Assembly (NCBI GenBank): GCA_013416795.1
Contig: RQSC01000024.1
Location: 225,982 to 289,981, forward strand
DNA: 64,000 bases
Direction: 5' to 3'
Source: Prasinococcaceae sp. CCMP 1430
Taxonomy: Eukaryota > Plantae > Prasinodermophyta
Positions 19,573 to 60,435 of the stretch are shown here, piece by piece. Made by a program: the position numbers and the translations under genes. Within the stretch, counting starts at the first letter, position 1. Each line of letters opens with the position of its first letter. The notes beneath the pieces are model-generated. The model was not told where the DNA came from. It did not search any database and was given only the letters and a program-made list of their open reading frames with translations.

Positions 19573-21794
19573 CTAATTCAGCGAGGCGTACATTGCAGCG
19601 ATCTCCTTGCTATACTTCTCCTTGAGCTGCGGACGCTTCGCCTTAAAAGTGGGCGTCGTGAGGCCGTTGTCCACGCTCCAAAGCTCCCAGTCGAGCATGA
19701 CAGCCTTTGGCAGCTCGAAGCCCTGCAGGCGCGACTTGGCGCCCTCCTTGAGCATGGAAGCGAGCACCGCCTCGCGCGCCTCGGGCAGCCGCGAGAGCGC
19801 CTCGGGCGTGCGCTCACCACCGATGCCGTTCTCGTCCGCCCAGGCGACGATGGCCTCTGGGTCGACGACGACCACCGACACGAGGCACGGCTGCAACGAG
19901 TCGCCGTGCACGAAGACCTGGGCGGCAAGCGGAGAGCGGCCGAAAACGCCCTCGAGCTTCTCAGGGGCGACGTACTCGCCTTGTGCAAGCTTGAAAATAT
20001 TCTTCTTTCGGTCGATAACCTTGAGGCGCCCGCCGGGGATCCACGTGCCAATGTCCCCTGTGTGCAGCCAGCCGTCCCCATCGATTGTCTCGCGGGTCTT
20101 TTTCTCGTCCTTGAGATACCCGCGGAAGACGCTCGGGCCGCGCACGCAGATCTCACCTCGCGCAAATGGCTTATCGCTCGTCGTGTAATTCATCTCGGGC
20201 ACCGACACGAGCTTGATTTCGTTGACGACGGCCGGCGGCCCGACGTTGCCACCCTCCGTCTCCCCGGGCGCCGTCGAAGACATCACGCCGCCCTCGGTCA
20301 TGCCATAGCCCTCTACTACCTCGCAGCTGAAAGCAGCGCGCAGGAAGTCGAGCACTTCAGCGCTGATGGGCGCCGAGCCGGTGGTCATCACACGCACCCG
20401 CCCGCCGAGCTTTGCCTTAATCTTGTTGAAGACCAGCCGCTCCCAAATCGGGTTGGGCTTCTTGCCCGCCTTGTATGCCGCGCGGTTGGATGCCATGGCC
20501 ATTGCGAACAGCCGCTGCTTCACGGCACCGCCCTCGCGTACCTGCTGGTGGACCTGGCGGAGGCACCAAGGTGGCGCCAGGCGCGCGGCAGTCGCGACGG
20601 GTGTCAGCTTTTGAAGCCAATGCAGCACACGAGCGAGGGCGCAGCGGAGGGGACGAATCCAACGTCCACATGCACGCGCGCGTTCGCGCGGGTACTCACC
20701 CCATCGTAGATGCGGTTGAACAGGCGCGGCACAGAAGAAAAACACGTAGGCCTGAGTTCGGCGATGTCATCCAGTAGCTTGAGCATGTCACCGCGGAAGA
20801 AACCACAGCGCACACCACGGTGCAGGTTGGACACCAGGGCGAGGCGCTCGTAGATGTGCGCCAGCGGTAGGTACGAGATGTGTGTGTCAATGGTGTCAGG
20901 GTCCGTCTTGCCGACCATCATGCGGCGCTCACACGAGGCCGCGTTGGACACCAGATTGCGGTGGGTGATGAGCGCGCCCTTAGGCAGACCCGTCGTGCCG
21001 CTCGTGTAGCAGACGGTCGCGACGTCGTCCGCATCGCCGGGCGTAAACTCCCGCGGATTCTGTGCGCCCTCGCTCAGCATCACCGAGTAGTGCACCACGT
21101 CTGCGCTCGGGCACACTGGCAGCGCCTTGTCCGACATGAGCGTGTGCTCGGGCGCCACCACCACCAACTTAACATTGGTCTTGGGCACGACGGGCATGAG
21201 CTTGGCGAGCTCATTTGTGGAGCACACGACCGCCTTGAGGTTCGCGTGGTTGCAGATATACTCCACCACGTCCGCACCGAGAGTGTCGTATAGCGGCACA
21301 GACACGATCCCCATCGCGGAGCACGCGAGCTCGGCGACGGCCCACTCCAAGCGATTCACCATGTACAGGCCGACTGCATCTCCCTTGAAGATGCCGCGGC
21401 CGCGCAGCGCAGAACCGAGGTTCGCGCGCGCTTCAGCCACCTGCTTGTAGGTGTGCCACACGTACGGCTCGCGGCCCGGCGGGGGCGCGCGTGTACCCAT
21501 GCACTCGCGGTCAGCGTACCTCTTCAGCCCCGCCTCGAAGCTGTCGTGGGTCGTGCGCACGAGGGGGTCGTCCTCGTAGAAGTCGATCAGCGCCCGCGGC
21601 GACTGGGCGCTGCGGTAGACGTCCCAGTTGGAGTCGTTCAGGCGCTCGGGTAACACGGCTGCCAGACCGGCCGGCGACGCGCCGATCGCCACGCTCGCCT
21701 CGAGTGCTCCAGCCTCATCCCTGCTGGCCTGTGTGCCCCTCCCTGCGCACACATGGCACGCGACCGCCGCGGCACGGCGCCGCGCGGCGTCCAT
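19573..21794 (-). CDS. LACS6: Long-chain acyl-CoA synthetase, LACS6/7 (peroxisomal)-like; intron 20699-20554
   Basis: YTSGTTGLPKG, SYLPLAHIYER, VEGYGMTE, GWLHTGDIG, IDRKKNIFKLAQGEYVAPEKLE. GGG|GTGAGT...CCGCCAG intron. PTS2-like RAAAVACHV near the N-terminus. Confidence 0.92.
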
Positions 21795-22490
21795 CGCGCT
21801 GAGCGAGGCGCGCGCGGGCCGTGAGGATGGTGAGGTCAGCGCGAGTTGCGGGCGCGCTCGTCGATGCTCGTCTGATACTCACGTGCGCGATGGGGGCCGC
21901 GCGGCGCAAGCCGGCAGCGCCAAGACGCGCCAGCCTGCGCGCGGCGCCTCCTCAGCCCTCTGCGCTCGCCTAGATCCCCCCGTTTACCGCCTCCTCTACC
22001 ACTTCCTCCCTCCCACCCACATCAACACCCCTGGCGCGCCGCGCAGGCCCCGACCGACCTGGTCCACGCCGCGAGCGCGAATCGGAAGTGCCGCGGCTGC
22101 CCCCGCGCGGCGCGGCGCGCAGGCGCGCGAAGGCGCGCCCGCCTCCGCACCGCCGCTCGCACGAGGCGCGCGCGCGCGTGACAGGAGGCTCCTTGACCAA
22201 TCCCAGCCCCTCGCGCCCTCACCTGCCCTCGCCCCGACGCAGCGCGTACGCGCTGTGGGGGTGCTGCGGAGCAGAAAAGCGTCGTCTCGAGAGAGCGAGA
22301 GGGAAAAAAACAGAGCTGCAATATAAAAACGGGAGAGTAATAGCATATGTCGAAATGAATTGGATTCTTCACGCGCGAACGCAGATGCGGATCTTTTTTT
22401 TTTTTTTTTACGCGGGGGCGCCACGNNNNNNNNNNNNNNNNNNNNNNNNNNNNNNNNNNNNNNNNNNNNNNNNNNNNNNNNNNNNNNNNN

Positions 22491-23379: not shown

Positions 23380-24146
23380 GCGCCCGACGCACATCGCGTC
23401 CCCACGCGGCGCGCGGGCGCTGCGCATGTACCATTTTTCCTTGTTTCCAGTCGCCGCCGCGGCCCGTGCGCGCGCGAGCGTTCCCCTCCCCCCCCGCCAG
23501 TCGACCCAAACCTTCCCACCTGCTGCGCCCCTCCCCGCCCCCGCCCCCCACTTGGCGTGCGCGTCCGCGCCCGGTGCCCCGCCCCCGCCGCCGCGCTCGC
23601 ACGCGACGCGGTTCGGGTCACACGCGCTTTTTAGGGCACGGATCACGCTCCAACAGGGTTTACAATTCGAATCCCAATTGCCCAATCCCACGTACCCTCC
23701 AATTCGCGACCCAAACCAAGCCTGCGCTTCGATGGAAGGGTTTTTTTTTTTTTTCGACGCGCGCGCGCGCGCGCGAGCGCCGCGGTTGCCGTTGTGATGG
23801 CCCGCGGGCCCGCGCCGCTTTTTTTTTTTTCAATTCCTCGCGGGCGCCGCCGGAAGAGGCGGGTGCGGTTTGATGGCGCGCGCCCGAAGCGGAAGCAGCC
23901 AAGGAAGGGGCCCGCTCGCGCGCGCGCGCGCGCGCGCGCACCCTAATTTCTTCGCGGGAGGAGGTTTCGGCGGCGCACGGCGCGGGGAGCCGCCCAGGGG
24001 GAATGCGGGTGAATGTGGACGCGCCGACGGCGCCGCGGAACGGAGCGCGGGCAAAAGCGGAAAACGCGCGTGCGCGCGCGCGCGCNGCGCGCGCGCGTTG
24101 ACCGGGCCCGCGGGCGCTGCCCTCTCCCGCCCTCGGCGGCCGCTGA

Positions 24147-25445
<1,299 letters not shown>

Positions 25446-25943
25446 GCGTCTCGCACCCATCTCACGCCGCGCCGCTCGATGTACAATATCTTGTAGCGCG
25501 CAACCCCAACCTTCACGCACAAAATCTCAAGCATGTAACAGCTCTCAGTTGCTACACAACATGGTGCAGCACATGCGAGGCGTGCTGGGTGAGGCGGAAG
25601 CGCGCCAATGCGCAGGCCCGCACTTCGTGGCACACCACGACCTGTACGGCGTCGGCCGCGATGCCATCTGCACCATGGGATGAGTATGTGTGTGTGTGCA
25701 CGCGCGCGCGCGCGCGCGCGTGGCGTAGATGTGTGTAAGTGGATCTTTTCTGTGTCTGAGTCACCCGAGGCCAGGGCCTGCGCCGGCGCGACGTGCGCGC
25801 TCTGTCCCCACCGAGCGCGTTCGAGCAGCGGCTGTTTTCGCGCGCGAACTCGCGAGGCTGCCACAGGTGGTGCCACAGAGCGCGCGTGGGAGAGAGCCCG
25901 CCCGCGCGCCCGGTGGGTCGGGCCGTTTGCGGCAGCTGGCACT

Positions 25944-27665
25944 ATGGTGCCAACGCCAGCGTGCGGGCTGCCGCGGGCCCGCCCGCTCTCCCGCGTACCG
26001 GGCGGCGCACGCGCCGTCGCGCCCGCTGGTGCTGGCGGCGTGCGCACGCGCGTACGCCCGTGTGCGAGGGCGGGCGCCGGCGCCAGCGCTGGCAGCAGGC
26101 GGGATGGCGCCGACGTTGGCGCCGCTGGCGTCGGCACCGAGGTCGGGGCTGACGGCGATGGCGTGGACGTTGTGCTCATCACGAATGGCCCGGGCGAGCT
26201 CACGTCGTGGGTACAGCCTGTTGCCGCCGCACTTCGGGCGCGCGGGTGCGCGGATGCGGCGGCGCGCACGCGCGTGAGCGTCGTGCTCACGCCGTGCCCA
26301 CACGCGAGCGGCGCCGAGCCGGAGGCCGCCATGCGCATCGCAGACTCTGGCCGTGTCTGCGTCGCGGGCGACTTCTTCCGCCTGCTTCTGTTCCTGCGCG
26401 GCGCCGGCTGGCGGCGCTGGGGCTTCCGGAGGCGCGGCGTCGTGGTCTTCCTTGGTGGCGACCAGCTGCACGCGGTGCTGCTCGCGTGGCGACTCGGATA
26501 TGCGTGCGTGATCTACGCCGAAGAGGAGGCGCGCTGGCCGCGACTCGCGCGATACGCGTTGCGCTCGCCGGAGCTGCTCGTGAAAGTGCCGCAGAACGCA
26601 CGCGAACGCGGGTCGGCAAGGGTCGTCGGTGACCTTTTCGCGGACGCCGTGCGCGGGGGCAGCGCGGACGGCAGCGCCGGCGCCAAGTTCGACGCCAGTG
26701 TGCTGCCGCTCGCCAATGCGCGCGCAGGTGTCACGGATACGGATGCGCCAGCCGTCGCGGACGCCGTCGGGCACGTGAATTCAGACGCGAACGTGCTGAC
26801 AGTAGGCCTGCTGCCGGGTTCCAAGCTCGCGAAGCTGCTCATCGCCGTGCCCTTCATGCTAGCCACCGCCGACGCGCTGGTGAAAATCCTCGCACTCGCG
26901 AGCGCTGGAGACAACGCCGCATCCAGGAACGTGCGCTTCGTGCTGCCGCTGGCGCCGACAGCTGACGTGGACACCCTCGCACGCTGCGCACGCGCCGAGT
27001 CGAACGAGTACGTGCGCCGCCTCGGCTGGGCGGAGGCAGACCTGGAGGACCCCGCTGGCGAGCTCGAAGTGTGCGCCATCCGCACGCGTGCAGGCACGCG
27101 CGCGAGCGTTGTGCGCGCGAGCTTGCACAGACACGCGGCACCCTACGAAGTGTACACCGAGTGCGACCTGGTGCTCACGACCATTGGAACCAATACTGCC
27201 GAGCTAGGCGTGCTGGGCGTGCCCATGGTGGTCGTGCTGCCCACGCAAGCGCTGGAGGTCTTCAAGGGCGGCGCCGGGGGGATCGCCGGCCTCTTGTGCC
27301 GCCTCCCAGGCGCGCTGGGAGACTTCTTTACACGTCGCGTCAATGCTGCCCTTCTCGCTGCGGCGGGTGCGTTGGCATGGCCGAACCGATGGGCAGGTCG
27401 CGAGGTGGTACCGGAGCTCGTGGGCGCGCTCACACCCGAGACTGTCGCGCGAGCGTGTGCGAGTCTGCTCCTGGAGCCAGCGCGGCTGAGAGCCATGCGC
27501 GCAGAATTGAGAGCGGCGTCGGGTTCGCAGGGCGCCGCGCATGCCGGCGGCGCCGCGCACGCGCTCGTAGAGATGGCCGCGGAGGCGGTGGTGGAGAGGT
27601 GGCCACAGGGGAGCGGGTCGGGAGACGGACGAGGGCCCAACGAGGCCGCCTTCGCGCACGCATGA
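25944..27665 (+). CDS. Cyanobacterial-type lipid-A-disaccharide synthase (LpxB)-related glycosyltransferase with transit-peptide-like N-terminus; intronless
   Basis: LITNGPGELTSWVQPV, VLTPCPHASG, VFLGGDQ, YAEEEARW, VVGDL, GLLPGSKLAKL, LTTIGTNTAELGVLGVPMVVVLPTQ and AWPNRWAGREVVPELVG match the cyanobacterial LpxB-like family. About 70 aa Ala/Arg/Gly/Pro-rich leader precedes it. Confidence 0.8.
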   Translation: MVPTPACGLPRARPLSRVPGGARAVAPAGAGGVRTRVRPCARAGAGASAGSRRDGADVGAAGVGTEVGADGDGVDVVLITNGPGELTSWVQPVAAALRARGCADAAARTRVSVVLTPCPHASGAEPEAAMRIADSGRVCVAGDFFRLLLFLRGAGWRRWGFRRRGVVVFLGGDQLHAVLLAWRLGYACVIYAEEEARWPRLARYALRSPELLVKVPQNARERGSARVVGDLFADAVRGGSADGSAGAKFDASVLPLANARAGVTDTDAPAVADAVGHVNSDANVLTVGLLPGSKLAKLLIAVPFMLATADALVKILALASAGDNAASRNVRFVLPLAPTADVDTLARCARAESNEYVRRLGWAEADLEDPAGELEVCAIRTRAGTRASVVRASLHRHAAPYEVYTECDLVLTTIGTNTAELGVLGVPMVVVLPTQALEVFKGGAGGIAGLLCRLPGALGDFFTRRVNAALLAAAGALAWPNRWAGREVVPELVGALTPETVARACASLLLEPARLRAMRAELRAASGSQGAAHAGGAAHALVEMAAEAVVERWPQGSGSGDGRGPNEAAFAHA

Positions 27666-28779: not shown

Positions 28780-29644
28780 TTAGTCATCGGCATCGCCACC
28801 GCCGAGCGCGTCGACCACGAGCGGGGCAGCAGCGCCCACCAGAGCGAGCGCTGCGACTGCGAGCCGGCGTCGCGCGCGACGGCGGCGCGGCAGCGGTCGG
28901 CGCCGGCGTGGGCCTGCGCCGCCCCCCACTACGAACACGACGGTCCCCTGCGCGCACACGAGCGTCTCAGAGTCAGCGATTGCAAGGCGAAGATGCACGG
29001 ATGCACTGCTGCGCAACGGGGAAGGTGGGGAACGAGTGCGCGCGTCGCAAGGCCTGGGCACGTACTGGTAGCATTGCCGCCCAAGAACAGAGCGCGAAGG
29101 TCGGCAGTGGCACATCCTCGCATAGGCCGAAGGCGTAGTTGGAGAGCTCGTAAGGCAGCACTGGCGTCAGGCGTGCGAGAACGACCGCACGCGCTGCGCC
29201 GACGCGCTCGACGCTGCGCTCAAGCCGCTCGAGCGCGCCGCCAGCCACCCTCGCGGCGAATGGTCTCAAAGCGGAGCGTGCTGCAACGAAGGCGACGCAC
29301 GCAGCGAGTGTGGAGGACACGCTCACGGCAGCGACGCCCTTTGTGGGACCCCACAGCGCGCCAGCACCGACGCTGAGCACGGCTGTCGGCGGAAAGAAGA
29401 CGAGCGCCGACGAGCAGTAGAGCGCCGCGAACGCGCCATAGCGCGCCGCCGCGGGCAGCTCGCCGAGGGCGTCCGCAAACGTCGACGCATCACCCGCGAG
29501 CGCATCACCAAGTGCGCCCACGTCAAGTGCCACCGCTTGTCTCCTTCGCCGCCGCGCGCCCAGCCGCTGCCCCGCGCGGCTGGCGCGCGGCTGTAGCGTG
29601 CGCCTGCCGGCCGGCCGGGCAAGCGCCTGCTGCGCAGCAGCCAT
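28780..29644 (-). CDS. TVP38/TMEM64 (SNARE-associated Golgi, VTT/DedA domain) membrane protein; intron 29065-28948
   Basis: FFPPTAVLSVGAGALWG, SSTLAACVAFVAAR, LARLTPVLPYELSNYAFG, MLP|GTVVFV. Confidence 0.82.
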
Positions 29645-29674
29645 CGGCCTGAGGCCCGGCGCGCGGTGCAGCCG

Positions 29675-29708
<34 letters not shown>
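29675..29708. repeat. C34 homopolymer (G34 on the TVP38-like sense strand, just upstream of ATG 29644)
   Basis: Directly visible run. Confidence 0.95.
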
Positions 29709-29711
<3 letters not shown>

Positions 29712-29980
29712 CCCTCGAGCATGCAGCGGTGTGGCAAGCACACGCACATGAGCGTTATCCAACCCTGCCAATGCCCGGCGTTAGGGTTGGGACTGTGCCC
29801 GCAAGCTTGAGCACGCGATTATTGATCCAGAGTGATGGGTGATTTCCAGGTCGGATTTAGGGATAAACGACAAGGGTTTACGTACACGTGGCGCTATCCA
29901 GCGGGTTCCCGCGGGGTGTCGTCTGAGGTGCGAGTGGGGGGCGGCACAGGCGCGGTCCTTGGCGAGGCGCGCCGTCGAAG

Positions 29981-55000: not shown

Positions 55001-58000
55001 TCAATGGAGCCCCTTCTCTAGCTCTTCGAGCCGCCGCCTGAGCGCGGCATTCTCCTCGCGCAGCGCCGCGACATCACCGCTGTCGGGCGCAGCCACGGAG
55101 GCCCTCTTTTGGGCAGGCTGAGCATGGGCGGGCTCATCAGAGCCGCCATCGCAGGGGCGCGCGCGCTTGCGCTCGCCATCTCTCAAACCGTCGCCAGGCC
55201 TGGCCCTCTCGGTCCCGTTACTATCGGTCACCTCCAGTCGCACCAGTCCGGGCAGTTCGTCAGTACCAGGCACCTCGCCCAGGGCAGCCGCATGTACGAT
55301 GCTCTCCAAGCTGCCAAGGAGCGTCCTGACGGGGATCGGCTTCGCGCACAAGAAGTCTACGCCCTTGCGCGCGTACGTGCGTGCGTCGTCGGGCATTGAG
55401 TTGGCCGTCACGAGCACAACCGGCAGACGGCGAGGGGGGTCAAAACTGCTGACGTTGAGTACTTCTTGGTGTGCCCGAGCCTCCGCCTCGACTGCCCGCA
55501 GCTTCTGCGTCACGTCTGTGCCGTACAGCCCGGGCATGACCTCGTCCAGCAAGGCGATGTCGAATGATGACGTGCGAAGCAGCTTCAGAGCGTCTTTGCC
55601 GTTCATGGCGGTCTCTATGTGTGGCGAAGGACTTCCCTGACTCTTGGCCGCCTTGCGCAATGCCATCTGCAGAATTCGCACGTTGGTGTGTTCGTCGTCG
55701 CAGATTAGCACGCGCAAGGCTTCCTTTGGCACTGCGCCGGCCTTCCCGCTCGCAGCACCATCCGTCGACTGTTCACCGCGCGCGGGCGCAATGACGTTCG
55801 CCGGCGCGGAGGCTCCCTCAGGTGTGCTCAATTCCGGTGGTGCGCGCGCCGAGGCCGACGGCGCCTGCGCGCGCGCACTTGCGCCACTGACGATTGACTT
55901 CGCGGTGCTTTCGCTGGCCGCTGCGCGCGCATTTGCAGTGCCGTCGCCGCCGCGAATTGTGTGCACGGCCGACTCCATGCGGCACTCGGAGGGCACGCCT
56001 GTTGCCATGAACTCAAACAGACCGCGCGGAATTGGCGATGAGGGCCTCTCAGAGCGGACAAGTGCATCGCCACGAGCGCTAGGGGCAATCCTGAAGGGAA
56101 CGGTGCACGTGAAGATCGAGCCCGCGCCCAGCACGCTCTCGACGGAGATATCGCCACCCAAGCAGCGCGCGATCGTGCGCGCGTAGTACAAGCCTAGGCC
56201 AGTCGACCCAAACTTGGAAACGTTGCTCGAGGCAAGTTCGAAACGCTTGAAGAGCTTCTCACAGTCCTCAGGAGCAATGCCCACGCCAGTGTCGACCACG
56301 GCAATTGACACGAGCACGCGGCTGCCACCACCATCACGGCTATTCGAATCGTTGCTCCCTCCAGCGATGTCCAAGCCTTGCGTGTCTGCAAGGCTCAGAT
56401 CTCCAAACGCAGGCCCTGCGACTTGGCCCTGGCCACGGTCACCAGAGGCACCGCCGCTGCGGTGCCGAGCGCTGGGCGTCCCAGCCGGCGCGTCGTGAGG
56501 CAGCGTCGCTCGCGTGCACTCGGCATGGAGTTCAATTTGCCCCGCCGGCGTGTACTTCACGGCATTCCACACTATGTTCGAGATCATCTGCGTCAGGCGG
56601 ACGTTGTCGCCCACAACGTGGCGAAGTCCGCGCAGCCCCCCCACGTCAAGACCCAGCCGTAGGCCCTTGGCGCTTGCTGCGGGGCGCACTCCCTGGAGGC
56701 AGTCCGAAATTGCAGCTTGCAGGTCGAAGGCCTGCGAGTTCAGCTTGAACTTGCCTTGCTCTATGGCCGTCGCGTCCAACACGTCGTCCACCACACGCCG
56801 CAGTTGCCTAGTGCAGGACTCAGTTGTCTGCAAAAGCTCGCCCATCTCTTCGCCGAGCATCGAGGAGCCCGAACGCATGAACTCGGTGGCGGCCACGATT
56901 CCGTTGAGAGGGTTGCGGATCTCGTGGCAGAGGAAGGAGATGGTGTTGGACTTTGCGCGTACTGCGGCCTCGGCAGCCATGCGCACCGCCTCTGCCTTCT
57001 CAAGAGCGCGTAGCATCGACTGGTCCTGCAGGTAGATGAGGCAACCGCCCTCACCTGGAGCGCCATCTCTCTCGGCGGCGGGGCGCACGCTCAGAACACA
57101 CTCCAGCGCGCGCCCGCGGCACATCACGGTGGTCCGCACGTCGGCTTCAGCGAGCGCGCCCGAGGCAGCCTGCGAGCTTCCTTCTGCGCGCGTGGCACGA
57201 ATGAGCGCTAGCTCCAGAGGGAAGAGCTGCTTGGTAGCCACCTGCATGCAACTTGCACCGCCCGCGCCTGTCCCTATCACCTCCTCAAGGAAAAGCTTGC
57301 CCACAACCTCGCGTGATGCTATCCCGCCTGTGACGACCTCCATCGCGTGATTCCAGAGAGTCACGCGCAGGTTGCGATCCAGGCAGAGGACTGGCGACTG
57401 CATGTTTTCGAGGAATCCAGGCTGCTCAGTCGAGGCAATGGCCGCGGAAATCTCCTTGGCGAGGACGACTGCGCTCGCTTGAGCGGGGGTGTTGCGCGCG
57501 GAGCGCACACCGGCAGGCGCTGCCACTACATCGCCGATGAGGCGCAGAATGCAACTTTCGCCAGATGCGGTCGTGCCCATGATGGCGAAGGCAACCCCGT
57601 GCGCCTCAGCGGTACCAACTCCCTCACCGTCGGATGCACTGTCGAGCGTGCTGCTCAGCGCTGCAGCCAGGGGTGACGCTGGTCCACCCTCCAGGCACGA
57701 GACCAGGGGCGTCCCGATGACTGCGTCAGCGTATAACCCTGTGCTCTGCTGTAGCCACCGATTCCACGTGCAGATCTCGCCGTTCGCGCTGACAGTCATG
57801 CATGCCATCGGGGCTCGATCGATGAGAAGGGAAAGCTCCGCTGCGACTTTCTCCAGCTCGCCCATGTCGCTCAATCTCGAGCGGTTGAGCACCGAAGCAA
57901 TGCCTGCGCGCAGCAACGATCCTGTGGCCGCTTCGACTGCGTCACGCAAGACGGCCACTAGCGCACCCGCACCACGCGCGGCAATACGGGGCCAAAGCTC

Positions 58001-60088
58001 GCATGTGCCGCGCAGCTGCTCCAGCACGACTGCAAAAGATGAGCGCGGTCCAAGGCGAGGTGCGCCCTTTACATCATCGTCACCAGCGCCATCGTCGTGA
58101 TCGATGACAACAACGTCCCTGCTATCCCCACGTGCTCCGGCCCACTTGATGTCCTGCAGCAGTTCTGCTCGCGTCCAGATGATCATGCCACCAATGGCGC
58201 GGCGCCCCTTTGGGCTGCCGACGGCACTGCCGCCACTCTCTGCGATTTCAGGATCAGAGCAGGCTCCTTCTTCAAGAGCGCTCGCTCCATTGTGCCCGTC
58301 GGTGCCTGTCACGCCCGCGGGTAGTTCGATGGCAACCACGCCAGCGATGCCTCCGGCGACCGCCTGTGCGGCGGCCAGAGCGGCGTAGCCCGCGACCTCA
58401 AGCGAGTCGCACACAAACACGCCCGGGTGCTGCGCGTCCTCGTGAAGCTTGCCCGAAGACTTAATCCAGCGAGCCACGCGCGCAGCCTCGATGCGCCCGG
58501 ATTCCGCTGCGCCCTCGCATGCAATGACAGTGCAACTGCTGTCGAGCACGAAGACCCCATCGGCGTCAAAGGGAACAGCCTCACGCAGTGTGTGTAGGGA
58601 CCCTGACAGCACTTCGGTTGCTTTCTGCCTCGGATTGTCCGCGATGATGAGCTCCACCAACCGCGAGTTGGCGCGCGCGTTGCGGTCAGCTGTGGACAGC
58701 CGGGCGATCTCGAGCTCGTGCTCCAGGCGCTGTGTGAAGATCTGTGCAATCATCGACAGACAAACGCGCGTGTGCAGGGGCACGAAGCGCGGCGAGATGT
58801 TGTGGCAAACCACCATTCCCCACATGCGCAGCGCGGGCTTGCCACCGCCAGCGCTCGACGAGCCGCCGATGTCTTCGTGTGCGTCATCGGCCGAGTCCGC
58901 CGCAGCGGCGGCAATGATGAGTGGAACGACAAGAGTGCCACGCACACCCATGTTGTTGAGATATTCTTTGTGACACCCGATCGTCCCGCGGATCTGTGAG
59001 CCGGCCAAAAGGGCCTGCCGGCAACCAAATGCTGAGGCGAGGTCGCCCTCCGCGCACTGCAGCACAGGCGATGGCGTGTCGTTGACGTCCGCCAGCAACC
59101 GCGGCGCTGGGTGCTTGGTCAAGAGCCTCCGATTGACCTGGGGAAGGTCGGTCGCCGGCCAATGCAGGTGCAGGAAGGACGGGACTGACTCGGCGCGGCG
59201 TGCTTCGGCGCACACCTCGCCGTGCATGTCCGCGTGCAGGCGGTACACCATGCAGCGGTCGAAGCCAGATATCTCCCGCACCTCGCAAGCGAGCGCCTCG
59301 CAGAGCGTGGCCTCGCCGCGCAGGGCGCGCAGCCGCATCGCCGCGCCCGCCGCCGCGCGGTGACATTGCGACACGCCCGGTGGTAGGTCGCGCACGTCAT
59401 CTGCTGAACTGTCTGAGTCAGAGTCAGAGTCGGAGCCACAGCCACCAAATGTAGCGCCGACAGCCGCACCGGTATGACTCCCGTCAGCGTTTGCTTCGCA
59501 CCCGGGGAGCGGGGCCAACGGGCTCGTATGTGTCGATTCAAGGTCTATCACAACTCCTTCCTCAGTCACGTGTACAGCAGCAGCGAGCGCTCCACCGTGC
59601 TCCTTCGACCGCCGCCGCGCGTCGGCCTCGCGTGGCGCGATAGCGATCGGCGTGCGTGCTTCAGGCGCTCCCGATGCCGCAGCGGCGCAGATTTTGCGCA
59701 ACGAGCGCGACGTCAGGGCGCGGGACGCTGGCGCTCCGAGCAGCTCGGACGCGCCCACGCCGAGCATCGGCGCGCACGTCTCCGACGCTGCGATGACGCG
59801 TGGCGCAGGCGGGCGTGCCGTAGGCCCCGCACGGCCGCCGCTCTGGCCCTTGCCGCCCTTAGGCGCGGCTGCCAGCGTGTGAGCGCCAAATGCGAGCGCG
59901 TGCGCCCGCTCGAGGATGAGCACGGCGCCATGTCCTTGGACGACGCCAGGACGATAAATTCGCTCCGTCACCTTCTCCACAAGCCGCGCACGCTCGGCCG
60001 CGTCGGCGCCGTCCGCGGCGCGCGCGGCAATCACATCCGCGTCGGCCGCGTCGAGCTCGTCGGCTGTGCGCACCGCGGCGCGCGCCAT
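55001..60088 (-). CDS. PHY: Phytochrome, PAS-GAF-PHY-PAS-PAS-HisKA-HATPase-REC; intronless (1695 aa)
   Basis: GVVIDLE, SGFDRCMVY, WPATDLPQ, GCHKEYLNNMGV (bilin Cys codon 58975-58973), PRSSF tongue, CHEIRNPLNG (His 56926-56924), NAVKYT, DTGVG, GLGL, REC with DD, D(55546-55544)EVMP and KP. Confidence 0.95.
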   Translation of the reverse strand: MARAAVRTADELDAADADVIAARAADGADAAERARLVEKVTERIYRPGVVQGHGAVLILERAHALAFGAHTLAAAPKGGKGQSGGRAGPTARPPAPRVIAASETCAPMLGVGASELLGAPASRALTSRSLRKICAAAASGAPEARTPIAIAPREADARRRSKEHGGALAAAVHVTEEGVVIDLESTHTSPLAPLPGCEANADGSHTGAAVGATFGGCGSDSDSDSDSSADDVRDLPPGVSQCHRAAAGAAMRLRALRGEATLCEALACEVREISGFDRCMVYRLHADMHGEVCAEARRAESVPSFLHLHWPATDLPQVNRRLLTKHPAPRLLADVNDTPSPVLQCAEGDLASAFGCRQALLAGSQIRGTIGCHKEYLNNMGVRGTLVVPLIIAAAAADSADDAHEDIGGSSSAGGGKPALRMWGMVVCHNISPRFVPLHTRVCLSMIAQIFTQRLEHELEIARLSTADRNARANSRLVELIIADNPRQKATEVLSGSLHTLREAVPFDADGVFVLDSSCTVIACEGAAESGRIEAARVARWIKSSGKLHEDAQHPGVFVCDSLEVAGYAALAAAQAVAGGIAGVVAIELPAGVTGTDGHNGASALEEGACSDPEIAESGGSAVGSPKGRRAIGGMIIWTRAELLQDIKWAGARGDSRDVVVIDHDDGAGDDDVKGAPRLGPRSSFAVVLEQLRGTCELWPRIAARGAGALVAVLRDAVEAATGSLLRAGIASVLNRSRLSDMGELEKVAAELSLLIDRAPMACMTVSANGEICTWNRWLQQSTGLYADAVIGTPLVSCLEGGPASPLAAALSSTLDSASDGEGVGTAEAHGVAFAIMGTTASGESCILRLIGDVVAAPAGVRSARNTPAQASAVVLAKEISAAIASTEQPGFLENMQSPVLCLDRNLRVTLWNHAMEVVTGGIASREVVGKLFLEEVIGTGAGGASCMQVATKQLFPLELALIRATRAEGSSQAASGALAEADVRTTVMCRGRALECVLSVRPAAERDGAPGEGGCLIYLQDQSMLRALEKAEAVRMAAEAAVRAKSNTISFLCHEIRNPLNGIVAATEFMRSGSSMLGEEMGELLQTTESCTRQLRRVVDDVLDATAIEQGKFKLNSQAFDLQAAISDCLQGVRPAASAKGLRLGLDVGGLRGLRHVVGDNVRLTQMISNIVWNAVKYTPAGQIELHAECTRATLPHDAPAGTPSARHRSGGASGDRGQGQVAGPAFGDLSLADTQGLDIAGGSNDSNSRDGGGSRVLVSIAVVDTGVGIAPEDCEKLFKRFELASSNVSKFGSTGLGLYYARTIARCLGGDISVESVLGAGSIFTCTVPFRIAPSARGDALVRSERPSSPIPRGLFEFMATGVPSECRMESAVHTIRGGDGTANARAAASESTAKSIVSGASARAQAPSASARAPPELSTPEGASAPANVIAPARGEQSTDGAASGKAGAVPKEALRVLICDDEHTNVRILQMALRKAAKSQGSPSPHIETAMNGKDALKLLRTSSFDIALLDEVMPGLYGTDVTQKLRAVEAEARAHQEVLNVSSFDPPRRLPVVLVTANSMPDDARTYARKGVDFLCAKPIPVRTLLGSLESIVHAAALGEVPGTDELPGLVRLEVTDSNGTERARPGDGLRDGERKRARPCDGGSDEPAHAQPAQKRASVAAPDSGDVAALREENAALRRRLEELEKGLH

Positions 60089-60435
60089 CCCCCGGCCCCC
60101 CGCCGACTGCCACGCAGCGCCGCCGCCGCCGCGCGGATAAATATGCCCTTCGCGCTCGCGCGCGCGTGGCGCATAAAAAACGCCAAAAAGTGACTCCGCG
60201 CAATCCACGTTGGACCGAAAAAGCACACAGCATACCTTGGTACCATCCGGATGGTAAAGGAGACCACCGCCCTCGCCTCGTTACAACCCCCATCCGAAAT
60301 TCCCGCCGTGGTTTTCCGCGGTGGGCGTCAAACGCAATTCGAAACGCGCCCCCAGCGGCGCGCGTATCTCACGCAACGCGTCGTCGAAATTGGTAAACCG
60401 CCGTGGTACGTACTACGTAACGTACGGTGCACTCT

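What the first reader, a model, noticed from the sequence alone, without database searches (positions are those of the whole stretch)
25944..27665. Cyanobacterial-type LpxB-like glycosyltransferase with a plastid-transit-peptide-like leader
Seen: block-by-block match to the cyanobacterial lipid-A-disaccharide-synthase-related family plus a 70-aa leader. Known: the land-plant lipid-A-like pathway (LpxA/B/C/D/K) is mitochondrial and of proteobacterial type. Inference: an endosymbiont-derived enzyme still sent to the plastid, implying a lipid-A-like or other unknown glycolipid in this alga's chloroplast envelope. With the OpgH-like gene, the window holds two bacterial-envelope glycosyltransferases.
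Basis: partly seen in the sequence, partly recalled or inferred. Interest (0 to 1): 0.7.

Follow-up and report, generated by a model that had tools for sequence, protein, structure and literature searches.

The report
Algal LpxB-like glycosyltransferase of cyanobacterial origin
A nuclear gene of the green alga Prasinoderma coloniale encodes a sugar-transferring enzyme inherited from the cyanobacterial ancestor of chloroplasts; it is not the lipid-A enzyme LpxB itself but an unstudied sister family that in other bacteria sits between lpxB and the lipid-A exporter gene, so some chloroplasts may still make a bacterial-type envelope glycolipid.

Summary
Window 25944-27665(+) is an intact 573-codon ORF. 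Its last 500 residues match hundreds of cyanobacterial proteins (35-42% identity, E to 1e-77). Its first ~73 residues are an arginine-rich, acid-poor, disordered extension that cyanobacterial homologues lack. The window is Prasinoderma coloniale nuclear DNA.

The protein is not LpxB. It fails the curated models for LpxB (Pfam 17.5 vs 22.6 bits; TIGR00215 no hit) and for TIGR03492. It belongs to a third, unnamed family that is the sister paralogue of LpxB.

Eukaryotic members form one clade (100/99) nested in cyanobacteria. They come from streptophyte algae, bryophytes, a lycophyte, conifers, Cymbomonas and Prasinoderma. No angiosperm or core chlorophyte was listed.

In non-cyanobacterial bacteria the family gene lies in lipid-A operons, typically lpxC-fabZ-lpxA-lpxI-lpxB-[family]-msbA-TIGR03492. 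No lpxK or waaA was found nearby. In 81 cyanobacterial loci it is unlinked from lpx genes.

The catalytic Asp and the UDP-binding motifs are kept. My best reading is an organelle-imported, probably plastid, UDP-sugar glycosyltransferase acting on a lipid-A-type or related lipid acceptor. The location and the substrate are inferred, not shown. No paper on the family was found.

The parts
25944..27665 (+). Complete single-exon coding sequence (573 codons plus stop) of the LpxB-like glycosyltransferase. It corresponds to PRCOL_00004316 of Prasinoderma coloniale.
   Evidence: ORF list and translation. A 99%-identical protein clusters with the EukProt P. coloniale entry. It aligns colinearly with homologues over the whole core.
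25944..26162 (+). N-terminal extension of 73 aa, presumed to be an organelle (plastid) targeting peptide. Residues 1-53 hold 10 Arg and no acidic residue, are rich in Ala, Gly and Pro, and are predicted disordered.
   Evidence: The extension is absent from cyanobacterial homologues, which have 4-11 aa there, and present in most eukaryotic ones at 35-150 aa. pLDDT is below 50 for aa 1-66 with no secondary structure. The upstream part of the ORF (25608-25943) lacks the coding-type GC3 excess of the mature region (GC3 0.63 below GC2 0.76) and holds a (GT)n(GC)n repeat, so 25944 is the likely start.
25961..26095 (+). Segment that the public gene model removes as an intron (GT..AG, 135 nt, in frame, no stop). 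If it is spliced out, the leader shrinks to 29 acidic residues. Its status is unresolved.
   Evidence: P0121 (528 aa) compared with the ORF. Codon-position GC is uninformative. All other copies found are genomic contigs. The related alga's orthologue P0002 has a similar 63-aa basic leader.
26163..26678 (+). N-terminal Rossmann-like domain of the GT-B fold, the presumed acceptor side. It holds NGPGE (26184-26198), the presumed catalytic base Asp173 within GGDQ (26454-26465), and YAE (26514-26522).
   Evidence: AlphaFold2 model. hhalign against E. coli LpxB aligns Asp173 with the LpxB catalytic base D98 (D98 per PMC5785501). Conservation across 100 sequences: N81, P83, G84 and E85 at 100%, D173 at 96%.
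26679..26792 (+). Variable, low-confidence linker or insertion between the two domains (aa 246-283).
   Evidence: pLDDT drops here, below 50 at aa 274-279. The region is gapped in cyanobacterial homologues.
26793..27608 (+). C-terminal Rossmann-like domain, the nucleotide-sugar side. It holds LPGSK (26811-26825, the pyrophosphate loop), TTIGTNTAE (27177-27203, with the ribose-binding Glu420) and AWPNRWAGREVVPE (27375-27416, an LpxB-type signature).
   Evidence: A profile search of PDB hits only E. coli LpxB (E 1e-10, C-terminal part). hhalign gives 96.5-96.7% probability. The motifs map onto LpxB P198-R201, T277/E281 and the PNLLAGRELVKEL motif.

Best explanation
The gene encodes a nucleus-encoded member of an unnamed GT-B glycosyltransferase family that is the sister paralogue of LpxB (GT19-like). 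The green lineage acquired it from the cyanobacterial ancestor of the plastid.

The protein is made with an N-terminal presequence of about 73 aa and is imported into an organelle, most likely the plastid. There it probably works as a peripheral-membrane, inverting, UDP-sugar-dependent transferase. It would bind the nucleotide sugar in its C-terminal domain (PGSK loop, GTNTAE glutamate) and use Asp173 as the base to activate a hydroxyl of a lipid-anchored acceptor.

In other bacteria the family gene is wedged between lpxB and msbA, in lipid A operons that also carry a TIGR03492 gene and show no lpxK or waaA. The ancestral job is therefore most likely a glycosyl transfer on the lipid A disaccharide or a close precursor, after LpxB and before MsbA flips the product. 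One candidate reaction is adding the first sugar of a Kdo-free core.

The algal enzyme would then build a lipid-A-type or derived glycolipid of the plastid envelope.

What is shown: the homology, the family separation, the cyanobacterial origin, the motif conservation, the operon linkage in bacteria and the presence of a leader. What is inferred: catalytic activity, the compartment, and the substrate in cyanobacteria and in the alga.
For: Family and origin:
- The protein has strong full-length similarity to cyanobacterial proteins.
- The eukaryotic sequences form one clade (100/99) nested in cyanobacteria, near Gloeomargarita and the picocyanobacteria.
- In a tree with canonical LpxB as outgroup, LpxB is one clade (SH-aLRT 100). 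The family, including cyanobacteria plus eukaryotes (100), is on the other side. Its subtree mirrors the LpxB subtree from the same loci.

The protein is not LpxB and not TIGR03492:
- Pfam LpxB scores 17.5 bits against a cutoff of 22.6, and NCBIfam gives no hit for the window protein.
- Cyanobacterial members score at most 25 bits to TIGR00215 (cutoff 190) and at most 22 bits to TIGR03492 (cutoff 219).
- As a control, E. coli LpxB scores 642 bits. Operon neighbours score 327 bits to TIGR00215 and 358 and 339 bits to TIGR03492.

Fold and active site:
- The AlphaFold2 model has pLDDT 79.6 and shows two Rossmann-like domains.
- The top structural hits are LpxB entries 5w8n and 5w8s.
- Asp173 aligns with the LpxB base D98, PGSK with PGSR, and GTNTAE with GTAALE. 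The motifs are 86-100% conserved.

Pathway link, from 85 non-cyanobacterial loci:
- 40 have a canonical LpxB directly upstream and 50 have an MsbA-like exporter directly downstream.
- 20 have LpxA, 18 LpxI and 15 LpxC.
- Where the contig leaves room, the figures are 28/59, 33/51, and 30/41 for either neighbour.
- A TIGR03492-like gene lies nearby in 33 loci.
- No LpxK, WaaA or LpxH hit was found even at E of 1 or less.
- Example operons are L089 and L170.
- Cyanobacteria have only lpxA, C, D and B and make Kdo-free LPS (PMC3087551).

Leader:
- The related orthologues P0002 and P0013 and the land-plant orthologues also carry basic or hydroxylated extensions.
Against: - In 81 cyanobacterial loci (1.19 Mb) the gene has no lpx, fabZ, msbA or TIGR03492 neighbour. 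The operon argument therefore comes from kin that score only 154-201 bits against the cyanobacterial members.
- No lipid A or cyanobacterial-type lpxA/C/D has been shown in this alga. The plant Lpx enzymes are reported as mitochondrial.
- The N-terminal loop (NGPGE) differs from the LpxB loop (GETSGD with E15 and S17), so the acceptor may differ.
- Glu420 is Gln in 14% of members.
- The public gene model splices out most of the basic leader. No targeting predictor or RNA data were available. Green-algal plastid and mitochondrial presequences look alike.
- The eukaryotic distribution also fits a tie to plastid peptidoglycan rather than to lipid A.
Confidence: 0.55

Rival explanations
1. It is a genuine lipid-A-disaccharide synthase (an LpxB isozyme) of the plastid. 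It would condense UDP-2,3-diacylglucosamine with lipid X.
For: The nearest solved structure and the only PDB sequence hit is LpxB. The catalytic Asp, the pyrophosphate loop, the ribose Glu and the C-terminal PN..AG.E.V.E motif are shared. Many databases label its kin 'lipid-A-disaccharide synthase'.
Against: It fails the curated cutoffs of PF02684 and TIGR00215, while true LpxBs pass them easily. It sits next to a canonical LpxB in the same operon in 40 loci, as an old paralogue pair, which argues for a different step. Cyanobacteria have a separate canonical lpxB in the lpxD-lpxC-fabZ-lpxA-lpxB cluster (PMC3087551). The N-terminal acceptor-side loop differs.
Confidence: 0.1
2. In plastids the enzyme has left lipid A chemistry. 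It serves the peptidoglycan-bearing envelope or another plastid glycolipid or lipid-linked glycan, for example by using UDP-GlcNAc on an undecaprenyl-linked or glycerolipid acceptor.
For: Named eukaryotic holders are Prasinoderma, streptophyte algae, bryophytes, a lycophyte, conifers and Cymbomonas. These come mostly from groups reported to keep the full plastid peptidoglycan pathway. No angiosperm or core chlorophyte was listed (PMC7455551; PMC10784329). In cyanobacteria the gene is unlinked from lpx genes, and in Nostocales an M23 peptidase lies two genes away. MurG is a close structural match (TM 0.63).
Against: Micromonas pusilla and Cyanophora, both reported to have the full peptidoglycan gene set, were not among the named hits. 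There is no conserved peptidoglycan gene neighbour. The bacterial kin point to lipid A.
Confidence: 0.2
3. The leader is a mitochondrial presequence. The enzyme joins the mitochondrial plant-type Lpx pathway.
For: The leader is Arg- and Ala-rich and acid-poor, which in green algae fits either organelle. The known plant Lpx enzymes are mitochondrial.
Against: The origin is cyanobacterial. The leader is rich in Pro and Gly (7 Pro and 16 Gly in 74 aa) and is predicted as coil rather than an amphipathic helix. Bryophyte orthologues have Ser/Thr-rich leaders of the plastid type. Angiosperms keep the mitochondrial Lpx pathway, yet no angiosperm orthologue of this gene was listed.
Confidence: 0.12
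4. It is not a transferase to a lipid acceptor. It could be a UDP-sugar hydrolase, with water as acceptor as in the GT-B enzyme PseG, or a non-catalytic partner of LpxB.
For: One cyanobacterial member has a weak PseG hit. Cyanobacteria lack LpxH, I and G yet need an acceptor for LpxB (PMC3087551). E. coli LpxB is an intertwined dimer, and the two paralogue trees mirror each other.
Against: Operons with the family gene often also carry lpxI (18 loci), so a hydrolase substitute is not needed there. The catalytic and nucleotide-binding residues are near-invariant, which argues against a pseudoenzyme.
Confidence: 0.08
5. The public spliced model is right. The protein then has only a short acidic N-terminus and stays in the cytosol or at an outer membrane surface.
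For: PRCOL_00004316-RA removes 25961-26095, which has GT..AG ends. That segment shows no codon-position GC signal.
Against: The segment is in frame and free of stops. Its only length difference from the other copies is a 6-nt in-frame one. The 54%-identical orthologue P0002 and P0013 have continuous basic leaders of 63 and 35 aa, and nearly all full-length eukaryotic orthologues carry long extensions. An Ala/Arg/Gly/Pro-rich peptide would erase the GC3 signal anyway.
Confidence: 0.1

Closest known systems
LpxB, lipid-A-disaccharide synthase (CAZy GT19 from my own knowledge; Pfam PF02684; NCBIfam TIGR00215; E. coli structures 5W8N, 5W8S, 5W8X)
   Same: Both have the GT-B fold. LpxB is the only PDB sequence match and the top structural match. 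The shared features are the presumed catalytic Asp (D98 with D173), the PGS(R/K) pyrophosphate loop, the G-T-x-x-x-E ribose motif and the C-terminal PN..AG.E.V.EL motif. Bacterial members lie in the same operon as lpxB.
   Different: The protein scores below both curated cutoffs. It forms a separate clade across a long branch. Its N-terminal loop is NGPGE rather than GETSGD. Its core is 40-120 aa longer, with insertions. It coexists with LpxB rather than replacing it, so it presumably carries out another step.
TIGR03492, 'lipid-A-disaccharide synthase-related protein' (a hypothetical equivalog of unknown function)
   Same: It is another LpxB-like GT-B family. It is found in the same bacterial lipid A operons, usually just after msbA.
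   Different: It is a different family. The window protein gives no hit to it, and cyanobacterial and plant kin score 13-22 bits against a cutoff of 219. True members score 339-358 bits. Its N-terminal motif is SNGHGED.
Plant mitochondrial LpxB (Arabidopsis At2g04560) and the plant Lpx pathway
   Same: Both are nucleus-encoded, organelle-targeted relatives of a bacterial lipid A enzyme in the green lineage.
   Different: The plant Lpx set is reported to be mitochondrial and at least partly non-cyanobacterial, and it is present in angiosperms. The gene here is of cyanobacterial origin, and no angiosperm protein was among its hits.
WaaA (KdtA), the Kdo transferase, as a functional analogy only
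   Same: WaaA is a GT-B enzyme (PMC5785501). From my own knowledge, it glycosylates the lipid A disaccharide on the cytoplasmic face before MsbA flips it. The proposed step for the family occupies the same place in the pathway, and no waaA was found near the operons that hold the family gene.
   Different: No sequence relationship was shown. The donor would be a UDP-sugar rather than CMP-Kdo. The analogy is an inference from gene order.
MurG (CAZy GT28 from my own knowledge), the lipid II synthase of peptidoglycan
   Same: It is a peripheral-membrane GT-B enzyme that uses UDP-GlcNAc on a lipid-linked acceptor, and it is a good structural match (3s2u, TM 0.63). It also belongs to a cyanobacterial pathway kept in the same plant lineages.
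   Different: There is no sequence-level match. The catalytic residue and signature motifs differ.

Membership tests
LpxB proper (TIGR00215 / PF02684) | Scores at or above the curated whole-protein cutoffs of the family models | tested here: not met
   PF02684 gives 17.5 bits against a cutoff of 22.6, on aa 398-438 only. NCBIfam gives no hit for the full protein or for the core. As controls, E. coli LpxB scores 642 bits and an operon LpxB scores 327 bits.
LpxB proper (TIGR00215 / PF02684) | Catalytic base Asp and UDP-binding residues (D98, P198-R201, T277, E281 of E. coli LpxB) | tested here: met
   hhalign maps D173, P291-K294, T416 and E420 onto them. Conservation in 100 family members is 86-100%. 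The residue list comes from PMC5785501.
LpxB proper (TIGR00215 / PF02684) | N-terminal G-E-T-S-G-D loop with E15 and S17 | tested here: not met
   The family has an invariant N-G-P-G-E at that position. hhalign did not align this loop reliably, so the mapping was made by eye.
LpxB proper (TIGR00215 / PF02684) | Groups with canonical LpxB in a tree | tested here: not met
   The 19 canonical LpxBs, including E. coli, form one clade (SH-aLRT 100). The window protein lies on the other side with the family.
LpxB proper (TIGR00215 / PF02684) | Makes lipid A disaccharide-1-phosphate from UDP-2,3-diacyl-GlcN and lipid X | not testable with these tools
   This needs an enzyme assay or lpxB complementation.
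TIGR03492 (lipid-A-disaccharide synthase-related protein) | Scores at or above the curated cutoff of 219.2 bits | tested here: not met
   The window protein gives no hit, and its kin score 13-22 bits. True members score 339-358 bits.
Unnamed LpxB-sister family (cyanobacteria, Viridiplantae and lipid-A-operon bacteria) | Full-length colinear similarity and the invariant motifs N-[GS]-P-G-E, G-G-D, P-G-S-[KR], [TP]-G-[TA]-N-T-A-E and P-N..A...V-P-E | tested here: met
   The profile search found 446 representatives at E of 1e-30 or better.
Unnamed LpxB-sister family (cyanobacteria, Viridiplantae and lipid-A-operon bacteria) | Falls inside the family clade, within the cyanobacteria-plus-eukaryote subclade | tested here: met
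   The eukaryote clade has 100/99 support. The cyanobacteria-plus-eukaryote clade has SH-aLRT 100 and is nested among operon-linked members (quick tree).
Unnamed LpxB-sister family (cyanobacteria, Viridiplantae and lipid-A-operon bacteria) | Gene lies between lpxB and msbA in a lipid A operon | tested here: not met
   This cannot apply to a eukaryotic nuclear gene. It is also not met in 81 cyanobacterial loci. It is met in 30 of 41 other bacterial loci that have room on both sides.
Plastid transit peptide | N-terminal extension relative to bacterial homologues that is basic, acid-poor and unstructured | tested here: met
   The extension is 73-74 aa with 10 Arg, the first acidic residue at position 54, and coil with pLDDT below 50.
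Plastid transit peptide | The extension is part of the mature mRNA | tested here: inconclusive
   The public model splices out 45 of its codons. The contigs found are all genomic, and codon statistics are uninformative.
Plastid transit peptide | Directs import into plastids and is cleaved | not testable with these tools

The most novel reading that the evidence does not exclude
The family is a missing enzyme of Kdo-free lipopolysaccharide synthesis. Working after LpxB, with the TIGR03492 protein as a further step, it would extend the lipid A disaccharide with a sugar in place of the LpxK and WaaA steps, before MsbA export. Cyanobacteria would use this route. The plastids of Prasinoderma, streptophyte algae, bryophytes, lycophytes and conifers would still make such a lipid-A-derived glycolipid in their envelope. 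That relic would have been lost, in parallel with peptidoglycan, in angiosperms and core chlorophytes.
Probability: 0.2. Interest if true: 0.85.

Novelty: new variant of a known kind. Interest (0 to 1): 0.62.

Why it matters
Two old questions become testable.

1. How do cyanobacteria, and other bacteria with only lpxA, C, D and B, finish and decorate a Kdo-free lipid A? A conserved, uncharacterised glycosyltransferase encoded between lpxB and msbA, together with a TIGR03492 gene, is an obvious candidate step.

2. Do chloroplasts retain any lipid-A-like or other bacterial envelope glycolipid? Histochemical hints date from 2006 (cited in PMC3087551). This gene is of cyanobacterial origin, carries a presequence, and is kept in tractable models (Physcomitrium LOC112285494, Marchantia Mp4g15230). 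No angiosperm orthologue was listed.

The result also corrects a widespread database label: these proteins are annotated 'lipid-A-disaccharide synthase' but fail the LpxB models.

Tried and rejected
- Bacterial contamination or a chance ORF is rejected. The gene lies 500 bp from an alpha-tubulin gene, the window GC content is uniform, and two TARA scaffolds show the same tubulin neighbour.
- Membership in TIGR03492, my first guess from memory, is rejected by score.
- Cyanobacterial gene neighbourhoods gave no functional hint. The neighbours are chlH, a 128-aa ORF, an M23 peptidase, ankyrin and DUF4351 genes.
- Contigs that might have been transcripts, which could have settled the leader intron, turned out to be genomic. 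Logan L086 breaks at the GC microsatellite and runs into the neighbouring gene. P0127 had no DNA held.
- Codon-position GC and substitutions between strains are too few or uninformative for the leader.
- Literature searches for the family, its locus tags, and 'LpxB-like', 'LpxB2' or 'paralog' terms found nothing relevant. The LpxB2 hits were papers on Leptospira.
- The first metagenome scan, with 60 diverse sequences, failed for lack of a conserved stretch. It was repeated with 14 closer ones.
- I could not show directly that a single cyanobacterium holds both canonical LpxB and this family. That rests on PMC3087551 and on the failing model scores.
- The third word search was not spent. It cannot be aimed at one organism, so it would not have answered whether P. 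coloniale has lpxA, C, D, B or K.
- The OpgH-like gene was not found among ORFs of 330 aa or more and was not pursued further.
Full report
**What is there.** The window is GC-rich (60-74%) eukaryotic nuclear DNA. Its genes are ordinary nuclear ones. They include a P450, a cNMP-binding protein, an MFS transporter, alpha-tubulin, a cold-shock-domain protein, a WD40 protein, PRMT, Sec16, CDC5 and a phytochrome-type histidine kinase. The finding's coordinates, 25944-27665(+), are an uninterrupted 573-codon ORF. The ORF continues upstream to 25608. That upstream part contains a (GT)n(GC)n repeat and lacks the coding-type GC3 excess of the mature region, so 25944 is the likely start. A 99%-identical protein clusters with the EukProt entry EP00793_Prasinoderma_coloniale_P005842 / PRCOL_00004316-RA. 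The organism is therefore Prasinoderma coloniale or a very close strain. Two TARA Oceans scaffolds show the same tubulin-then-gene arrangement.

The word search returned 321 relatives. After the alga's own copies and a 54%-identical orthologue from an unnamed alga come green-lineage proteins from Mesostigma, Physcomitrium, Cymbomonas, Marchantia, Closterium, Chlorokybus and Cryptomeria. After those come hundreds of cyanobacterial proteins of 410-450 aa at 35-42% identity over about 80% of the query. A scan of species-representative genomes found more than 546 relatives, and the best 80 were all cyanobacteria or unnamed metagenome bins. In alignment the conserved core begins at aa 74 (VDVVLITNGPGE). 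Cyanobacterial proteins begin 4-11 residues before that point, while nearly all full-length eukaryotic ones carry 35-150 extra residues. The alga's extension has 10 Arg and no acidic residue in its first 53 positions. It is rich in Ala, Gly and Pro. AlphaFold2 predicts it as disordered coil, with pLDDT below 50 for aa 1-66.

**A caveat on the leader.** The public model (P0121, 528 aa) removes 25961-26095 as an intron (GT..AG, 135 nt, in frame). That would leave a 29-aa acidic N-terminus. I could not settle this. Every other copy I could fetch is genomic, codon-position GC is uninformative for an Ala/Arg/Gly/Pro-rich peptide, and strain differences are too few. Three things favour the long leader. 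The segment is stop-free. Its only length difference from the other copies is a 6-nt in-frame one. The orthologues P0002 and P0013 have continuous basic leaders of 63 and 35 aa.

**It is not LpxB, nor TIGR03492.** Pfam LpxB matches only aa 398-438, at 17.5 bits against a gathering score of 22.6. NCBIfam gives no hit. Cyanobacterial and plant members score at most 25 bits to TIGR00215 (cutoff 190) and at most 22 bits to TIGR03492 (cutoff 219). E. coli LpxB scores 642 bits as a control. The relationship to LpxB is nevertheless real:
- A family profile hits only LpxB in the PDB (E 1e-10).
- hhalign gives 96.5-96.7% probability.
- The AlphaFold2 model (pLDDT 79.6, pTM 0.81) is a two-Rossmann-domain GT-B protein. 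Its best structural matches are the LpxB entries, narrowly ahead of UDP-GlcNAc 2-epimerases and MurG.

The residues that Bohl et al. list for the LpxB active site (PMC5785501) have counterparts here. D98 maps to D173, which is 96% Asp with 3% Glu. P198-G-S-R201 maps to P291-G-S-K294, with S and K at 100%. T277/E281 map to T416/E420, where E is 86% and Q is 14%. The C-terminal PNLLAGRELVKEL maps to PNRWAGREVVPEL. The N-terminal loop differs: an invariant NGPGE stands in place of GETSGD.

**Origin.** I built a maximum-likelihood tree (64 rows, LG+C20, ultrafast bootstrap/SH-aLRT). The 24 eukaryotic or eukaryote-like rows form one clade (100/99). Rooted on Thermostichus, that clade is nested in cyanobacteria near Gloeomargarita and the picocyanobacteria. 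The window protein is sister to P0002 (100/100), and land plants group together. This is the pattern of a single endosymbiotic gene transfer. A profile made from eukaryotic members listed the following above all cyanobacteria:
- bryophytes: Physcomitrium, Ceratodon, Marchantia, Riccia
- a lycophyte: Diphasiastrum
- conifers: Cryptomeria, Taxus
- streptophyte algae: Mesostigma, Chlorokybus, Klebsormidium, Chara, Closterium
- Cymbomonas, Prasinoderma, and some unnamed sequences

No angiosperm, core chlorophyte, Micromonas, red alga or Cyanophora appeared. The positive set comes mostly from groups reported to keep the full plastid peptidoglycan pathway (PMC7455551; PMC10784329). The match is imperfect, because M. 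pusilla and Cyanophora, which are reported to keep that pathway, are missing.

**The functional lead.** Cyanobacterial neighbourhoods were uninformative. The neighbours are chlH, a small ORF and an M23 peptidase. No lpx, fabZ, msbA or TIGR03492 gene occurs in 81 loci covering 1.19 Mb. Because the word search and family scans left the protein open, I ran the exhaustive profile search. It returned 446 representatives at E of 1e-30 or better. After the cyanobacteria and plant group at 380-660 bits, there is a plateau of full-length relatives at 230-340 bits from other bacteria. The named ones are a Bacillota MAG, an Acidobacteriota genome and unclassified MAGs. All of them also fail the LpxB and TIGR03492 cutoffs.

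Their context is striking. On contig L089 the order is LpxC, FabZ, LpxA, a PEMT/ICMT-like gene, LpxI, a canonical LpxB, the family gene (whose start overlaps the lpxB stop), then an MsbA-like ABC exporter. A metagenome scan gave 80 more loci. I used E. coli and operon proteins as phmmer queries against the 85 non-cyanobacterial loci:
- 40 loci have a canonical LpxB directly upstream.
- 50 have an MsbA-like exporter directly downstream.
- 20 have LpxA, 18 LpxI, 15 LpxC and 12 FabZ.

Counting only contigs with room, the figures are 28/59 for LpxB, 33/51 for MsbA-like, and 30/41 for either. No LpxK, WaaA or LpxH was detected, even at E of 1 or less. The gene after msbA proved to be a true TIGR03492 member (358 and 339 bits), and such a gene is present in 33 of the 85 loci. 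These operons therefore hold three LpxB-type enzymes, in the order lpxB, the family gene, msbA, TIGR03492. They also hold sugar-nucleotide enzymes, a GT2 gene and lptB/F/G. In a tree with canonical LpxB as outgroup, LpxB is one clade (SH-aLRT 100). The family is on the other side. The cyanobacteria-plus-eukaryote clade (100) is nested in it, and the family subtree mirrors the LpxB subtree from the same loci. That is the signature of an old paralogue pair inherited together (quick tree).

**Interpretation.** The following is shown:
- The protein is an intact member of a distinct sister family of LpxB.
- It is of cyanobacterial origin and carries an N-terminal extension.
- Its active-site motifs are conserved.
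- In many bacteria the family is genetically coupled to lipid A synthesis and export.

The following is inferred:
- The protein is an active, inverting, UDP-sugar-dependent transferase.
- The ancestral reaction is a glycosyl transfer on the lipid A disaccharide or a near precursor, after LpxB and before MsbA. This fits Kdo-free LPS and the four-gene lpx set of cyanobacteria (PMC3087551).
- The algal protein is imported into the plastid and makes a lipid-A-type or derived envelope glycolipid.

The weak points are these. The operon link is absent in cyanobacteria. Nothing is known about lipid A in this alga. The plant Lpx pathway is reported as mitochondrial. The gene model of the leader is unresolved. 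The main rivals are a shift to a peptidoglycan-related or other plastid acceptor, mitochondrial targeting, a hydrolase or partner role, and true LpxB activity.

Plastid localisation and any product remain untested.

**Novelty.** I found no paper on this family in eight literature searches that bore on it. Databases call its members 'hypothetical', 'glycosyl transferase' or, misleadingly, 'lipid-A-disaccharide synthase'. I rate it a new variant of a known kind and moderately interesting. It gives a concrete, genetically tractable handle, in cyanobacteria, Physcomitrium and Marchantia, on Kdo-free LPS assembly and on the long-standing claim of lipid-A-like material in chloroplasts.

Noticed in passing
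L170:7539-12942 and L088/L089 (metagenome and MAG contigs): Bacterial lipid A operons with three LpxB-type genes in a row. The order is canonical LpxB, the family of this finding, an MsbA-like exporter, then a true TIGR03492 member. A TIGR03492-like gene is present in 33 of 85 such loci. No LpxK, WaaA or LpxH was detected nearby.
   Followed up: partly
L089:2653-3216: A PEMT/ICMT-type methyltransferase gene sits between lpxA and lpxI in a Bacillota MAG lipid A operon. It is a possible lipid A modification enzyme.
   Followed up: no
window 26025-26030: The window carries a 6-nt in-frame insertion in the leader relative to the two other copies that I aligned (TARA scaffold L001 and Logan contig L086). 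The 571-aa length of the other full-length copies fits the same difference. Otherwise the gene differs from them by about 0.5%.
   Followed up: yes
window 25683-25729: A (GT)n(GC)n microsatellite lies in the 500-bp spacer between alpha-tubulin and the gene. A Logan assembly contig breaks exactly there. Similar GC repeats occur around 23900-24100.
   Followed up: partly
window 24195-25445 (+): The main exon of alpha-tubulin starts at about residue 36 of the protein, so at least one intron and exon lie upstream. The tubulin and LpxB-like adjacency is conserved in TARA scaffolds.
   Followed up: partly
window 22426 onward: The window holds 480 N bases; the first run starts at 22426. They look like assembly gaps. 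Ambiguous bases also give an X in ORF translations near 24000.
   Followed up: no
window 28973-29749 (-): A VTT/DedA-type membrane protein (PF09335) with a poly-Gly and Arg-rich N-terminal extension lies 1.3 kb downstream of the gene. From my own knowledge, bacterial DedA proteins have been linked to recycling of lipid carriers. The adjacency in a nuclear genome may be coincidence.
   Followed up: no
window 55001-60226 (-): A large phytochrome-type hybrid histidine kinase with PAS_2, GAF, PHY, PAS, HisKA and HATPase domains and a receiver domain.
   Followed up: no
window 19573-21794 (-): An AMP-binding (acyl-CoA synthetase-like) enzyme is split over two overlapping ORFs. The cause is an intron or a frameshift.
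   Followed up: no
It may be multi-exon or shorter.
   Followed up: partly
L009-L083 (Nostocales loci): In many Nostocales the cyanobacterial orthologue is flanked by a divergent chlH (Mg-chelatase H). Downstream are a convergent 128-aa ORF with no Pfam hit, then an M23 peptidase. The 128-aa ORF also recurs in some Leptolyngbya-like genomes.
   Followed up: partly
P0290 cluster (Physcomitrium LOC112285494): The moss orthologue has four annotated isoforms. It appears on 183 contigs, and the Logan contigs listed for cluster members are about 2 kb. If those are RNA-seq assemblies the gene is expressed; I did not check their origin.
   Followed up: no
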